A DNA stretch of 64,000 nucleotides from Diadema antillarum (taxonomy: Eukaryota). Shown piece after piece: positions 1-28,875 of the stretch. The stretch covers positions 2,480,001 to 2,544,000 of the forward strand of contig NW_027270904.1 of NCBI RefSeq assembly GCF_040938485.1, given 5' to 3'. The first letter of the stretch is position 1. The number at the start of each line of letters is the position of its first letter. The translations under genes and the position numbers were made by a program. The notes below the pieces were generated by a model. That model saw only the letters and a program-made list of their open reading frames with translations. It was not told the origin of the DNA and searched no databases.

Positions 1-149
1 GCTCTTGTATCCCTGGATGATGGAGAAACTGATAGAGATGCCCAGCGTCCTATCAATCTCGAAGGACACGACAATCTCTGCATTCTCCTTAAACTCACTG
101 GGTGGGTCGTACTCTATGGAGAAACCCGATTCCTCGTCCTGATAGCCAC
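1..149 (-). CDS. VWD-domain exon, runs off window (GGYQDEESGFSIEYDPPSEF...)
   Basis: cag acceptor at 150-151; phase 1 matches the upstream exon; stop-free to the window edge. Confidence 0.7.
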
Positions 150-26700: not shown

Positions 26701-28875
26701 TACAAGGCTCCCCTTCCTTGACTTCGCATGCCACTGTAGTAAATCTCATAGATGCCTTCATCCTCAGCCACGATTGGATCAGAAAACATGAACGTGGTGT
26801 TTGTCTGTCCTGTCACGGGGTTTCCTCCATCTTTTCTCCAGACAGGGGTACCAGGAGAGCAAGCACCTGTATCTGTCATTTCGATCATCACTCCTGCGTC
26901 ACCTACATTGACCGTACGGGTGAATACCCCATCCACAGGCTCAAAGCAGGCTAAATGCACAAACATAATATAGTTTATAATACATCAATACAATATCATT
27001 AGATCTATCACACTAGTGTAATGAGGAATATTGTTTTCCTACCTGAGGCTAAATAAACAGAAATAGAGACTGTGTGTACTGCTAAAGTACTAATCATAGT
27101 GTTATTACTCTGTTAAGTCAAAATTCACATGCACATTCAAAAGAGATGTCGTCAGATGAAGGAGAAGGGAAGGTTTCAAATTTTAAAATGCTCTGAGAAT
27201 TTGAATTTCATGCAAAGCAAGACCCACGATCGTCATCAGGGCAAGCATTTTGTTGCCTTATCAATAAACAAGCCTCACTATTTATTTTTCAAAGTACGCG
27301 CATTTTCCGGTTCCATTACAGATTAGTATTTTATAACGTACAAATTCATTTTATTATGCCCAATAACATGTAAAATGTAAGAAATTTCTATGTAAGTTGC
27401 TAAACAGTTGCTAAGAATATTTTTTTCAAAATATTTTTAATCTTCAAGATTATGATCATAAAAACTCTGGCCTGAGGATTTTTTCTTTGTGTGTGTGTGT
27501 GTGTGTGTGTGTACGTATGTGTCATTTTGATAATTTTTACTGTAATAATCTTAGACAGTAAATTTCTGTTAGCTTTGTGAAAATTACACACGAAGCTCTT
27601 GACCACCTTTAGTATGAATACATGTATTCAAGATTGGACCACCTTATATACATGATCTACGAGGTAAGGCTAATGGAAATCATGTTTGTAGCATTATTGA
27701 TGACATTAATTGCAAAAGTGATCAGCACGTAGTTTAATCACTAGACTGGTTTTAGAAAGGTAACACTTTTCTTTTATGTTCACCCACTGATGCCCCAATA
27801 TTTGTAATTTTGTCTAAACTAATTCGTTTGCCCTAAATTTTCATTTTTCCTTCTTATCGATCTGAATAATGTGTTTCAAGGGCGAAATGGACCAGTTCAA
27901 CATGTTAAAGATTGTTAAATGAAAGAGAGAGGTAACTTCTTGGCTACTTCATCTGAAATCATAGTTATGAGCTCATCTTGCAATATACGGATTTTGATGA
28001 TTGCCGTCAGGGATTTATATTAGGAGTTTATAGTTTATCCTATGATTAAATGGAGGACAAAGTGGATGATTTGAAGACTGGTTAAACCTATCCATTAGCG
28101 GATCCAGAAATTCCTTGAAGACGGGGAGCATTTAAAAACTATAGGGGGCGCACGCACCACACCCCGGAAGTTTTTATCTATTTATTTTTTTGTTGTTGTT
28201 CTAAGCAAAACAAAACAACAAAACAAAACAAAACAAAACAAAAAGTGCCGGAGCGCCCGCTGCTCCCCCGCCTTGATCCGCCACTGTTACGATACGATAA
28301 TACATTTCCGTCTTTGCCCAGCAGCTGTTGATAGCATTTATTTTGTATGAAGTTCTTTCTTTTTATTATTGGTCGGCATAGGAAAAGGGATACCTGCAAA
28401 ACAGTTTCTAAGCTTAAATCTAATTGGCCGTTGTTATCATATAGTTGTCGTTATTCTCAACAAAGACTCCTCATCATGGAGTTAGATGTACCTGATGTAA
28501 GCTATTCTTACAAGTTTGATTGTGTATATTGTCATGGGAGTACAAGGCATTGTTTTGTTATCATACCGTCACTTCGTTTGAAGAATGATGATATCGTCTG
28601 GTCGTCAAAGCCTTCTTGTGAACCAAGGCAGTAAAATGCTCCGAATCCCTCCACATCCCACTCAGAAGTGGGTGGAAAAATTACACGTCTGCCACCATAA
28701 GCAAGATTGCTAGCTGAAGGTGGCTCAGGTGAAGTGTCACTGGGGATTGGTGCTGTCCTGCCAAAGTCACGGGAGGCTGATGAGGATGGAGAGCTTCGAA
28801 AGCAAAGCATCTGAGAAGTTGCACTCTCAATGTTTGAAAATCCAACTGAAATCACAGTGATGTGGACCCGCTCAC
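1..28875 (-). CDS. Spliced mosaic extracellular protein, partial at both ends: TIE-like Ig-Ig-EGFx5-Ig-FN3 (copy A) + PTS mucin + NIDO + AMOP + VWD, about 2,630 aa in window
   Basis: 19 exons join in one frame with canonical AG/GT sites: 28567-28875, 26684-26950, 26205-26339, 20925-21089, 20369-20518, 19028-19183, 18177-18308, 16787-17071, 16189-16497, 11359-15714, 9532-9680, 8971-9123, 6009-6152, 5172-5574, 4008-4217, 2990-3109, 2018-2226, 830-917, <1-149. Phases are compatible at every junction. Confidence 0.8.
830..917 (-). CDS. VWD-domain exon (VELLLNDERNAISILINGTQNVSDDAIIQ)
   Basis: AG/GT boundaries, 88 nt, phase 0 to 1; the VE.L...ING pattern expected in VWD. Confidence 0.75.
1217..1583. 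mobile_element. TTAA-flanked MITE (Kolobok-like), family 1
   Basis: ttaaagg...cctttaa ends; internal sequence recurs at 19351-19724 and 33142-33507. Confidence 0.7.
2018..2226 (-). CDS. VWD-domain first exon (FTWGDPHISTLDGNMYTFNGLGEY...)
   Basis: WGDPH..T.DG..YTFNG.GEY motif of MUC4/SUSD2/Mesh-type VWD; AG/GT boundaries. Confidence 0.9.
2990..3109 (-). CDS. AMOP C-terminal exon (DADILPLYYC...YDERRKPVTCNDYNPPLQ)
   Basis: Not in the ORF track; 120 nt, phase 1-1; Y..RR.P.TC..Y.PP motif preceding GDPH. Confidence 0.85.
4008..4217 (-). CDS. AMOP exon (DAEDETLCFQRWRG...GPGVRCYYDRST)
   Basis: 210 nt, phase 1-1, AG/GT; G..CxY motif. Confidence 0.8.
4727..5016. mobile_element. Small foldback-type element with about 17-bp subrepeats (GAAGGTTCGTTATTCC) in inverted arms
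   Basis: Left arm repeats ...ccgaaggttcgtt... and right arm repeats ...aacgaaccttcgg...; boundaries approximate. Confidence 0.65.
5172..5574 (-). CDS. NIDO end / AMOP start exon (VNTFQAIIGTNG...CMDWY...CPCSLLQAVFDWRF)
   Basis: NTFQ NIDO motif and C..WY...CPC...QA..D.RF AMOP motif; 403 nt, phase 0 to 1. Confidence 0.9.
6009..6152 (-). CDS. NIDO exon (EYVGNLSAVQQVLQ...KVTFVNFRPAVSASDDE)
   Basis: 144 nt, phase 0-0, AG/GT; splices directly to VNTFQ. Confidence 0.8.
7182..7829. mobile_element. TTAA-type MITE with long imperfect TIRs (Kolobok-like), family 2
   Basis: ttaaaggaaaccaaaacccaaagagcaat... versus ...attgttctttgggtttcggtttcctctaa; the inverted match extends about 100 bp. Confidence 0.7.
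7956..8048. repeat. (AT)n microsatellite
   Basis: Visible directly; similar tracts near 5015-5060, 8727-8790, 16080-16140 and 33665-33705. Confidence 0.95.
8971..9123 (-). CDS. NIDO exon (ITSSGALVFSN...QIYYK)
   Basis: 153 nt, phase 0-0; equivalent to the NIDO I..NG.ISF and V.Y segments. Confidence 0.8.
9532..9680 (-). CDS. NIDO first exon (GSFYLDYGPGEEDL...FSYVR)
   Basis: Not in the ORF track; 149 nt, phase 1 to 0, gtgagt donor; YG...D motif. Confidence 0.8.
9869..10974 (+). mobile_element. Solo LTR (Ty3/Gypsy-like), 1,106 bp
   Basis: TGTCAC...GTAACA ends, 4-bp TSD ATAC on both sides, TATATAA at 10314-20, AATAAA at 10904-09, no internal ORFs. Confidence 0.8.
11359..15714 (-). CDS. Giant mucin-like PTS exon, 1,452 codons of pentapeptide repeats (PTxEG / PTPER / PTTVG)
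   Basis: Stop-free 4,356 nt; acag acceptor at 15715-16 and gtaag donor at 11357-58; phase 1-1 joins FN3 to NIDO. Confidence 0.9.
16189..16497 (-). CDS. Copy A FN3 exon (TIE-type, ...VAAVREGPGGTGP)
   Basis: 309 nt, phase 1-1; W...Y...L.GL.P.TEY.V.V FN3 pattern. Confidence 0.9.
16787..17071 (-). CDS. Copy A Ig3 exon
   Basis: 285 nt, phase 1-1; FTC...GEYEC Ig cysteine pair. Confidence 0.85.
17125..17677. mobile_element. PIF/Harbinger-like MITE, present only in copy A
   Basis: TIR AG(C/G)(C/G)CTTTTTACACTTG and TTA TSD; empty site in B (about 31478) and C (about 41331). Confidence 0.75.
18177..18308 (-). CDS. Copy A EGF/laminin-EGF exon 5
   Basis: 132 nt, phase 1-1; ECQGAFYGLGCVESCPC...C. Confidence 0.85.
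19028..19183 (-). CDS. Copy A EGF exon 4
   Basis: 156 nt, phase 1-1; CDDGYYGTDCTDKCHC... Confidence 0.85.
19351..19724. mobile_element. TTAA-flanked MITE, family 1 (copy A)
   Basis: TTAA at both ends; absent at the homologous site in C (single TTAA near 42996). Confidence 0.75.
20369..20518 (-). CDS. Copy A EGF exon 3
   Basis: 150 nt, phase 1-1; DCSSGTYGAGCSQTCHCQSG... Confidence 0.85.
20925..21089 (-). CDS. Copy A EGF exon 2 (TIE signature FCLPDPFGCSC)
   Basis: 165 nt, phase 1-1; CLPDP[YF]GCSC is characteristic of TIE1/TEK EGF2. Confidence 0.9.
21889..23270 (+). mobile_element. 5'-truncated CR1/L2-like LINE RT fragment, frameshifted
   Basis: YRPISLL, KAFDT, GVPQGSLLGP and FADDT motifs across three ORFs; absent from the homologous intron of B. 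Confidence 0.9.
23359..23723. mobile_element. Complete TTAA-flanked MITE with about 155-bp TIRs, family 3
   Basis: ttaaaggggaaggctagtaactgatcagtggg...cccactgatcagttactagccttcccctttaa. Confidence 0.85.
24280..26045 (+). mobile_element. Second 5'-truncated CR1/L2-like LINE RT fragment with (AATGA)n-type tail
   Basis: YRPISIL, KAFDTVDH, GVPQGSNLGP and YADDT motifs; frameshift at the poly-A run near 25100. Confidence 0.9.
26205..26339 (-). CDS. Copy A EGF exon 1 (CPAGKWGPPYC...CYNGGICDDETGRCIC)
   Basis: 135 nt, phase 1-1; matches the TIE EGF1 pattern. Confidence 0.9.
26684..26950 (-). CDS. Copy A Ig2 exon (T.TVNVGD...WRKDG...DEGIY...LIVR)
   Basis: 267 nt, phase 1-1; TIE Ig2-like. Confidence 0.9.
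28093..28287. mobile_element. Short TIR element (GCGGATCCA...GATCCGC) with (AAAAC)n core, shared by all three copies
   Basis: Inverted ends; paralogs near 37836-38038 and 52776-52986, so it predates the duplications. No TSD identified. Confidence 0.5.
28567..28875 (-). CDS. Copy A Ig1 exon (TIE N-terminal Ig-like, GAFYC)
   Basis: 309 nt, phase 1-1, ccag acceptor and gtatg donor. Confidence 0.85.

What the first reader, a model, noticed from the sequence alone, without database searches (positions are those of the whole stretch)
1..28875. Unusual domain fusion: TIE/angiopoietin-receptor ectodomain grafted onto a MUC4/SUSD2-like body
The Ig-Ig-EGF-Ig-FN3 order and the CLPDPFGCSC and VREGPGG motifs are TIE-like. 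TIE receptors normally continue through more FN3 domains to a transmembrane segment and kinase. Here the single FN3 splices in frame to a 1,452-aa mucin and then NIDO-AMOP-VWD, the MUC4/SUSD2/Mesh module. I do not recognise this combination from known families. It would place a ligand-binding head at the tip of a long glycosylated stalk.
Basis: partly seen in the sequence, partly recalled or inferred. Interest (0 to 1): 0.75.

Follow-up and report, generated by a model that had tools for sequence, protein, structure and literature searches.

The report
Tie-like head on urchin mucin gene
A sea-urchin gene appears to join a copy of the outer part of a Tie-type receptor to a long sugar-coated stalk and a MUC4-type anchor module; the exons fit together cleanly, but no RNA evidence was available, and related urchin genes already carry other heads on the same stalk-and-anchor body.

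Summary
The sequence features are real and lie on the minus strand.

- **Head:** nine exons, 28845-16189 (Ig-like, Ig, five EGF, Ig, FN3).
- **Stalk:** one 4,356-nt exon of exactly 1,452 codons, 15714-11359.
- **Body:** at least nine NIDO/AMOP-region/VWD exons, 9680-1. The gene runs off the window start.

Every junction has AG/GT splice sites and matching phases, so FN3, mucin and NIDO join in frame.

The first two EGF exons match human TIE2 best among solved structures, in the right order. The other head domains are generic, and Ig1 is unconfirmed. AMOP is supported only indirectly.

No signal-peptide exon was found anywhere in the window, so neither half looks like a gene of its own. The head cassette is one of three tandem, intact copies.

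None of 132 fetched NIDO-VWD relatives has a Tie-like head. However, urchin paralogues carry other heads (reprolysin, Sushi, EGF) on the same mucin plus NIDO-VWD layout, and NIDO-VWD relatives from other animals carry CUB/LDLa, or in oysters Ig plus FN3.

I read this as a new variant of a known, shuffle-prone family.

The parts
28567..28845 (-). Head exon 1, putative Ig-like (copy A). Two Cys 58 residues apart, phase 1-1. Holds a hypervariable patch at codons 43-63.
   Evidence: Splice sites and phase. Intact in all 3 copies. No Pfam or PDB hit and a poor model. Patch.
26684..26950 (-). Head exon 2, Ig domain. It ends in ...YKLIVR, just before the EGF1 exon, as in TIE2.
   Evidence: AF2 model pLDDT 72 with a beta-sandwich; Foldseek gives generic Ig V-like matches. 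The TIE2 alignment covers the junction.
26205..26339 (-). EGF1 exon, Tie-type
   Evidence: The three best PDB hits are TIE2 (2gy5, 4k0v, 9lv4) at residues 185-232, E 2e-8; the next hit, Notch, is at 2e-3. Pfam EGF_2 1.1e-4.
20925..21089 (-). EGF2 exon with CLPDPFGCSC (20988-20959)
   Evidence: TIE2 chains are the only PDB hits, at residues 237-277, E 2e-6. Motif position.
20369..20518 (-).
   Evidence: Phase 1-1 and intact in copies A, B and C. No significant PDB hit.
19028..19183 (-). EGF3 exon, SCARF/MEGF-like
   Evidence: Best PDB hit is scavenger receptor class F member 1, E 1e-4.
18177..18308 (-). EGF4 exon
   Evidence: Acceptor taacag|AA and donor AAGAAG|gtaatg, phase 1-1.
16787..17071 (-). 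Ig3 exon
   Evidence: Pfam Ig_3 3.4e-4 and I-set 6e-3, both below the curated cut-offs. Generic Ig hits in PDB.
16189..16497 (-). Single FN3 exon with VREGPGG (16255-16235); donor CAA|GTAAGA, phase 1
   Evidence: Pfam fn3 2.7e-9. PDB best hit is Dscam; TIE2 FN3 scores 2e-5. Sequence.
11359..15714 (-). PTS (mucin) exon of 4,356 nt = 1,452 codons, built from 15/45-nt repeats. Acceptor acag|GG, donor G|GTAAGA, phase 1-1.
   Evidence: Composition T 27%, P 20%, E 17%, G 13%, no Cys. Tandem repeats.
5172..9680 (-). NIDO exons 9680-9532, 9123-8971, 6152-6009 and 5574-5172. The last runs into the start of AMOP (ECMDWY...TCPCSLLQAVFDWRF).
   Evidence: Profile hits in order at hmm positions 33-76, 76-132, 143-183 and 186-332; the last has iE 1e-30. 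Pfam NIDO 1e-4. Splice chain.
2990..4259 (-). AMOP-region exons: 4259 or 4217 to 4008, and 3109 to 2990
   Evidence: Profile hits with iE 1.3e-6 and 1.4e-9. No direct Pfam AMOP hit. The homologous stretch is AMOP in newt mucin-4-like, E 6.6e-6, and weakly so in D. setosum P0010.
1..2226 (-). VWD exons 2226-2018 (WGDPH at 2218-2204), 917-830 and 113-1. The gene runs off the window.
   Evidence: Pfam VWD 2.7e-5. Profile iE 4.6e-33 and 5e-5. Splice chain.
29711..38601 (-). Head cassette B: the same 9 exons, all intact, plus a 117-codon stub of the PTS exon (30066 to the stop at 29713-29711)
39454..53543 (-). Head cassette C: the same 9 exons, all intact, plus a 152-codon PTS stub (39914 to the stop at 39456-39454)
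   Evidence: Its upstream flank is homologous to the spacers before cassettes A and B.

Best explanation
This is one long minus-strand gene of the echinoderm 'mucin-like protein' / MUC4-type family. It has a heavily O-glycosylated PTS stalk followed by NIDO, an AMOP-like region and a VWD domain with a GDPH site.

Ahead of the stalk it has acquired, by shuffling of phase 1-1 exons, a Tie-type ectodomain cassette: Ig-like, Ig, EGF x5, Ig, one FN3. That cassette, together with the first part of the stalk exon, was later duplicated twice in tandem inside the gene.

**Shown by the sequence.**
- All exons are open and lie on one strand.
- Every junction has a canonical splice site and a compatible phase.
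- The GDPH motif is present.
- The three cassettes are intact.

**Inferred.**
- A signal-peptide exon lies upstream of the window.
- At least the cassette next to the stalk (A) is spliced FN3 to PTS to NIDO.
- The product is a secreted or membrane-tethered mucin. The VWD self-cleaves at GD|PH, as in MUC4 and SUSD2 (my own knowledge of those families).
- The 1,452-residue stalk would extend roughly 0.3 micrometre and hold the cysteine-rich Tie-like head away from the cell.
- The head would be a binding or recognition module. A fibrinogen-domain (angiopoietin-like) ligand is only an analogy with TIE2.
For: **Exon structure.**
- The chain from Ig1 to VWD has AG/GT at every junction and matching phases.
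- The PTS exon is internal: it has an acceptor and a donor but no start.
- It lies 474 bp below the FN3 donor, and that gap holds no AATAAA or ATTAAA.
- No signal-peptide-like first exon with a phase-1 donor was found in that gap, in the introns of cassette A, or anywhere else in the window.

**Homology.**
- The EGF1 and EGF2 exons hit TIE2 best, in collinear order.
- Eight body exons hit a 59-protein NIDO-VWD profile in order.
- Dozens of family members hit both the NIDO/AMOP exon and the VWD exon, with the expected spacing.

**Constraint.**
- All nine head exons are intact in all three cassettes. Over eight of them, pN/pS is about 0.5 overall; outside the Ig1 patch pN is 0.006 or less against pS 0.04-0.06.

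**Precedent.**
- Paralogues have the same head plus PTS plus NIDO-VWD layout. D. antillarum XP_071487730 has a reprolysin head and a 1,260-aa PTS; an L. pictus protein has Sushi plus PTS.
Against:
- No protein containing these exons turned up in any search. The exhaustive search with the NIDO/AMOP exon gave at most 42% identity. The word searches with the FN3 exon, the PTS N-terminus and a paralogue's body found no product of this window. D. antillarum RefSeq proteins are in that collection.
- Length filters and 50% clustering could hide such a protein, so this counts only weakly against the gene.
- The 5' end and signal peptide are not in the window, and neither is the 3' end.
- Two upstream cassettes end in PTS stubs with in-frame stops. 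How a transcript reaches cassette A is therefore unknown.
- The Ig1 fold and AMOP are not directly confirmed.
Confidence: 0.6

Rival explanations
1. The head and body are separate products. The Tie-like cassettes would encode short secreted proteins that end in the PTS stubs or just after FN3. The PTS-NIDO-VWD part would be an ordinary MUC4-like mucin fed by a distant first exon that skips all head exons, so the head-on-stalk protein is never made.
For: - Cassettes B and C end in stubs with in-frame stops. ATTAAA motifs lie about 275-305 nt downstream of those stops.
- Reading through the FN3 donor reaches a stop after 9 codons.
- Because all exons are phase 1-1, skipping any set of them stays in frame.
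- No database protein shows the fusion.
Against: - Cassette A has no stub. Its FN3 donor (CAA|GTAAGA) lies 474 bp from a good acceptor of the full PTS exon, in the same phase.
- That intron holds no polyadenylation hexamer.
- No separate first exon for the mucin part was found in the window.
Confidence: 0.2
2. The locus is young and decaying, or partly an assembly artefact. The triplication could reflect misassembled haplotypes of a highly heterozygous genome, and the gene might be unexpressed or broken outside the window.
For: - The D. antillarum assembly annotated by NCBI retained both haplotypes: 84% of BUSCO genes are duplicated and heterozygosity is 2.5% (PMC13511894).
- No product of this window was found among the proteins searched.
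Against: - There are three copies, not two, in tandem on one contig.
- Cassettes B and C share the same junction. The copies carry different transposon insertions and one 3-nt exon length difference.
- Overall identity between copies is about 94-95%, which is more divergent than the reported heterozygosity.
- All 27 head exons and all body exons in the window are open, with conserved splice sites.
Confidence: 0.1
3. The three cassettes are used as alternative or tandem heads. Either one of three Ig1-variable heads is chosen per transcript, or two or three heads are strung together with short PTS linkers. The result would be a small diversified recognition system on one mucin tail.
For: - All exons are phase 1-1, so any such combination stays in frame.
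- The stubs keep the PTS acceptor and hold a phase-1 G|GTAAAA 13 codons before their stop.
- A 21-codon patch in Ig1 differs at pN 0.32-0.39 and pS 0.23-0.28 between cassettes, while the flanks and introns are 98-99% identical.
Against: - There are no transcripts.
- Three variants is a very small repertoire.
- Synonymous sites in the patch are raised as well, so positive selection is not shown.
Confidence: 0.1

Closest known systems
MUC4 (vertebrate membrane mucin) and the invertebrate 'mucin-like protein' / mucin-4-like genes of echinoderms, lamprey and amphibians
   Same: - A PTS domain sits directly N-terminal to NIDO, an AMOP region and a VWD with GDPH.
- The best hits of the NIDO/AMOP exon are newt and lamprey mucin-4, starfish 'mucin-like protein', and Diadema paralogues, at 33-42% identity.
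   Different: - MUC4 has only a short unique N-terminus ahead of the PTS (my own knowledge). Here about 620 residues of Ig/EGF/Ig/FN3 precede it.
- The C-terminal part (C8-3, EGF, SEA or TM) lies outside the window and was not seen.
- Identity to every relative is low; no orthologue above 42% was found.
TIE1/TIE2 (angiopoietin receptor) ectodomain
   Same: - The order Ig, Ig, EGFs, Ig, FN3.
- The EGF1 and EGF2 exons match TIE2 residues 185-232 and 237-277 best among all PDB sequences, including FCLPDP[FY]GCSC and the LIVR-C-x-x-x-KWGP junction.
   Different: - Five EGF exons instead of three, and one FN3 instead of three (the TIE counts are my own knowledge).
- No transmembrane segment or kinase follows; a mucin exon comes next.
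- Ig2, Ig3 and FN3 are only generically Ig/FN3-like, and Ig1 is unrecognisable.
- Ligand binding is untested.
Echinoid paralogues with other heads: D. antillarum XP_071487730 (P0070) and an L. pictus protein (P0075)
   Same: The overall plan is the same: a globular head, a long PTS stalk, then NIDO-VWD(GDPH) followed by EGF arrays and SEA.
   Different: - The heads are reprolysin protease or Sushi/EGF, not Tie-like.
- The PTS repeats are unrelated in sequence.
- These are automatic gene models and could themselves be merged genes.
Oyster (Magallana gigas) Ig + FN3 + NIDO + VWD proteins (P0120, P0121)
   Same: Ig (I-set) and fn3 domains lie N-terminal to NIDO-VWD-C8-3_MUC4.
   Different: - No EGF pair between the Ig domains.
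- No similarity to the window's head exons by tblastn.
- No PTS block was detected in P0121.
SUSD2 / Drosophila Mesh
   Same: They share the NIDO-AMOP-VWD core. This rests on my own knowledge plus the Mesh papers listed.
   Different: They have no long mucin domain and no Tie-like head. Their Sushi and TM tail could not be tested here.

Membership tests
MUC4-type / NIDO-AMOP-VWD family | NIDO domain | tested here: met
   Pfam NIDO E 1e-4 on one exon, 22.8 bits against a cut-off of 25 for a whole protein. Four collinear exons hit the NIDO part of a 59-protein family profile; the last has iE 1e-30.
MUC4-type / NIDO-AMOP-VWD family | AMOP domain between NIDO and VWD | tested here: inconclusive
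   No exon gives a Pfam AMOP hit, even at E up to 0.1-1. Three exons align collinearly to the NIDO-VWD linker of relatives. That linker scores as AMOP in newt mucin-4-like (6.6e-6) and weakly in D. setosum P0010 (0.018). The joined protein was not scanned.
MUC4-type / NIDO-AMOP-VWD family | VWD domain with GDPH autocleavage motif | tested here: met
   Pfam VWD 2.7e-5, 25.0 bits against a cut-off of 22.9. WGDPH at 2218-2204. Profile iE 4.6e-33. Cleavage itself was not tested.
MUC4-type / NIDO-AMOP-VWD family | Long PTS (mucin) domain N-terminal to NIDO | tested here: met
   A 1,452-codon exon, 49% P+T+S, with no Cys, made of tandem 5/15-residue repeats and in phase with NIDO exon 1. Glycosylation was not tested.
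MUC4-type / NIDO-AMOP-VWD family | C-terminal EGF domains, transmembrane anchor | not testable with these tools
   The gene runs off the window at coordinate 1.
TIE receptor tyrosine kinases | Tie-type EGF pair (FCLPDPxGCSC) after Ig2 | tested here: met
   The EGF1 and EGF2 exons hit TIE2 best (2e-8; 2e-6, with TIE2 chains the only hits), at consecutive positions 185-232 and 237-277.
TIE receptor tyrosine kinases | Ig1-Ig2 ... Ig3 flanking the EGFs | tested here: inconclusive
   Ig2 folds as an Ig sandwich (pLDDT 72; generic matches). Ig3 scores Pfam Ig_3 3.4e-4, below the cut-off. Ig1 has no hit and a model at pLDDT 40. Pfam's Tie2 Ig-like model gave no hit.
TIE receptor tyrosine kinases | Three FN3, transmembrane segment, split tyrosine kinase | tested here: not met
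   Only one FN3 exon is present. The next exon in phase, 474 bp downstream, is the mucin exon, followed by NIDO-VWD. No kinase was seen in the ORF listings of the window. This is therefore not a TIE kinase; only the head resembles one.
TIE receptor tyrosine kinases | Binds angiopoietin fibrinogen-like domain through Ig2 | not testable with these tools
   No ligand data exist, and Ig2 shows no Tie-specific similarity.

The most novel reading that the evidence does not exclude
The locus could be a small diversified recognition system. Three intact Tie-like head cassettes each carry a different hypervariable 21-residue patch in the first Ig-like domain. They would be spliced either alternatively or in tandem onto one long mucin stalk and a MUC4-type anchor, giving the urchin a choice of binding heads displayed far above the cell surface or within mucus.
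Probability: 0.15. Interest if true: 0.75.

Novelty: new variant of a known kind. Interest (0 to 1): 0.45.

Why it matters
- If the fused protein is made, a receptor-type binding head normally tied to a kinase has been moved onto a non-signalling mucin scaffold. That would be a clear natural example of exon shuffling giving a mucin a specific binding tip.
- It would add a candidate for mucus- or glycocalyx-based recognition in an animal whose immune biology is of conservation interest.
- If the two halves are not joined, the locus is simply a MUC4-like gene with Tie-like exons nearby.

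Tried and rejected
**Reads.** There is no RNA evidence.

**Joined model.** Every search was exon by exon, by reference, so no whole-protein Pfam or architecture search was run.

**Finding this window's own protein or cDNA fragments.**
- The FN3 exon as a word-search query found nothing in the 56-178 aa range.
- The PTS N-terminus (688-2,188 aa range) found only unrelated low-complexity proteins.
- A paralogue's body region (1,366-4,347 aa range) found 73 relatives, none of them encoded by this window.
- Longer or shorter products remain unsearched.

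**Reaching the NCBI annotation of the locus.** Four exact look-ups of transposon ORFs from the window were not on record.

**Per-exon domain checks.** Pfam gave nothing for Ig1, Ig2, EGF2-4, NIDO exons 1-3, the AMOP exons or the later VWD exons. The Ig1 structure prediction was too poor to use.

**Readings considered and rejected.**
- The plus-strand 1,485-aa GPSVV ORF is not the coding frame. No flanking exons or splice sites support it, whereas the minus strand has phase-matched neighbours.
- The copy A FN3 exon is not truncated. The short ORF was an artefact of the ORF tool's start-codon rule.
- The spacers between cassettes are not foreign filler. They are homologous to the flank upstream of cassette C, plus a repeat fragment.

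Full report
**What is there.** The window has about 35-40% G+C and no N. It carries one long array of exons on the minus strand. Reading from high to low coordinates, copy A has these parts.
- Ig-like exon, 28845-28567
- Ig exon, 26950-26684
- Five EGF exons: 26339-26205, 21089-20925, 20518-20369, 19183-19028, 18308-18177
- Ig exon, 17071-16787
- One FN3 exon, 16497-16189
- One giant repeat exon, 15714-11359
- NIDO exons: 9680-9532, 9123-8971, 6152-6009, 5574-5172
- Two exons of the NIDO-VWD linker: 4259 or 4217 to 4008, and 3109-2990
- VWD exons: 2226-2018, 917-830, 113-1

The gene leaves the window at coordinate 1.

**Check of the observation.**
- The giant exon is exactly 4,356 nt, or 1,452 codons. 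It has 27% Thr, 20% Pro, 17% Glu and 13% Gly, with no Cys and no stop, and is built of 15/45-nt repeats.
- All nine head exons and the mucin exon are phase 1-1 with AG/GT.
- The FN3 donor (CAA|GTAAGA) and the mucin acceptor (acag|GG) are 474 bp apart and in frame.
- The mucin donor (G|GTAAGA) and the first NIDO acceptor (aag|GA) are also in frame. The body then chains with phases 0, 0, 0, 1, 1, 1, 0, 1 without a break.

**Domain identities.**
- Single-exon Pfam scans give fn3 at 2.7e-9 (1e-10 for copy B), NIDO at 1e-4, VWD at 2.7e-5, EGF_2 at 1.1e-4 and Ig_3 at 3.4e-4.
- Against all PDB sequences, the EGF1 exon hits TIE2 residues 185-232 best (2e-8; the next family is at 2e-3). The EGF2 exon hits only TIE2 chains, at 237-277 (2e-6). 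These are consecutive positions in the right order.
- EGF3 resembles scavenger receptor F EGFs. EGF2b has no hit.
- FN3 and Ig3 are generic.
- Ig2 models as an Ig sandwich (pLDDT 72) with generic matches.
- The first 'Ig' has no hit and a poor model, so it remains putative.
- For the body, I built a profile from 59 NIDO-VWD segments of fetched relatives. It hits eight window exons in strictly collinear order. Dozens of relatives hit both the NIDO/AMOP exon and the VWD exon with the expected spacing.
- AMOP itself never scored on an exon. The homologous linker scores as AMOP in newt mucin-4-like and only weakly in a D. setosum paralogue. I therefore call AMOP inconclusive.

**One gene or two.**
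- The mucin exon is an internal exon: it has an acceptor and a donor but no start.
- No signal-peptide-like first exon with a phase-1 donor was found between FN3 and the mucin exon, in the introns of cassette A, or anywhere else in the window.
- The Ig1 exon also starts at an acceptor. Head and body therefore both depend on a first exon upstream of the window, which favours one transcription unit.
- The FN3-mucin intron holds no AATAAA or ATTAAA.

**Triplication.**
- The head cassette occurs three times in tandem: copy A, copy B at 29711-38601, and copy C at 39454-53543. Overall identity is 94-95%, introns included.
- Copies B and C each end in a stub of the mucin exon that keeps its acceptor but runs into a stop after 117 or 152 codons.
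- The spacers before A and B are homologous to the flank upstream of C, which is interrupted there by transposons, plus a repeat fragment.
- The duplicated unit was therefore about 650 nt of upstream intron, the nine head exons, and the first part of the mucin exon. The ancestral gene had one head next to the stalk.
- All 27 head exons are intact with conserved splice sites. Over the eight exons compared, pN/pS is about 0.5.
- In Ig1, a 21-codon patch differs at pN 0.32-0.39 and pS 0.23-0.28. The rest of the exon has pN 0.006 or less, and the flanking introns are 98-99% identical.
- An earlier first-stage note on this same window (s1-208698) had already flagged the triplication.

**Comparison with what is known.**
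- An exhaustive search with the NIDO/AMOP exon found 58 relatives at no more than 42% identity. They include newt and lamprey mucin-4, starfish 'mucin-like protein', and D. antillarum and D. setosum paralogues.
- None of the 132 fetched family proteins matches the head exons beyond generic EGF similarity. No paper in the library holds Tie2, NIDO and AMOP together.
- The family is nonetheless very modular. Relatives carry CUB, LDLa, somatomedin B, HYR, EGF or FN3 ahead of NIDO, and oyster proteins carry Ig plus FN3.
- D. antillarum XP_071487730 has a reprolysin head, a 1,260-aa PTS stalk, then NIDO-VWD-EGF-SEA. An L. pictus protein has Sushi plus PTS.
- The layout 'head, mucin stalk, NIDO-VWD' is thus already present in urchin gene sets. 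The Tie-like head is what is new here.

**Organism.**
- Earlier notes name Diadema antillarum. I did not test this directly.
- Among echinoids, proteins of D. antillarum and D. setosum are the best hits of the NIDO/AMOP exon.
- The genome paper reports an uncollapsed assembly and 2.5% heterozygosity (PMC13511894). This calls for some caution about the copy number.

**Absence from databases.** No product of this window was found. Length filters and clustering limit what that absence can mean.

**Verdict.** The sequence observation holds. The fusion is the best reading, at about 0.6, but it remains unproven. It is not a TIE receptor, since no kinase or TM follows and there is only one FN3. It is a MUC4-type mucin gene with a Tie-like head: a new variant of a known, shuffle-prone kind.

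Noticed in passing
window 28655-28717, 38411-38473, 53353-53415 (minus strand): A 21-codon patch in the Ig1 exon is hypervariable between the three cassettes: pN 0.32-0.39 and pS 0.23-0.28. The rest of the exon is nearly invariant, and the adjacent introns are 98-99% identical.
   Followed up: partly
window 29711-53543: The head cassette is triplicated in tandem, introns included. Copies B and C end in truncated mucin-exon stubs with in-frame stops. A phase-1 G|GTAAAA lies 13 codons before each stop, so on paper the stubs could splice in frame to the next Ig1 exon.
   Followed up: partly
window 20369-20518, 34196-34345, 46659-46811: An additional 8-Cys EGF exon lies between the CLPDPFGCSC exon and the next EGF exon. 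It is intact in all copies, and copy C is one codon longer. Copy C also diverges in the CLPDPFGCSC exon, where it is 3 nt shorter.
   Followed up: yes
window 21836-25769 (+), 43510-44497 (+), 55557-59441 (-): Retroelement insertions differ between the cassettes: reverse-transcriptase ORFs in an intron of copy A, an RNase H-like ORF in copy C, and a long LINE with an ORF1-like gene upstream of copy C.
   Followed up: no
window 48120-49072: A 40-nt tandem repeat array lies in an intron of cassette C. It is not present in the other cassettes.
   Followed up: no
P0070 (D. antillarum XP_071487730, 4,824 aa): This RefSeq model joins EGF plus a reprolysin propeptide and protease to a 1,260-aa PTS region and NIDO-VWD-EGF-SEA. 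It is either another head-on-mucin gene or two neighbouring genes merged by the pipeline.
   Followed up: partly
window 23360-23722, 29550-29710, 39290-39455: A short repeated element of about 160 nt sits exactly at the junction between each mucin stub and the following spacer. It also occurs as an inverted pair inside the copy A LINE region, and may have mediated the duplication.
   Followed up: partly
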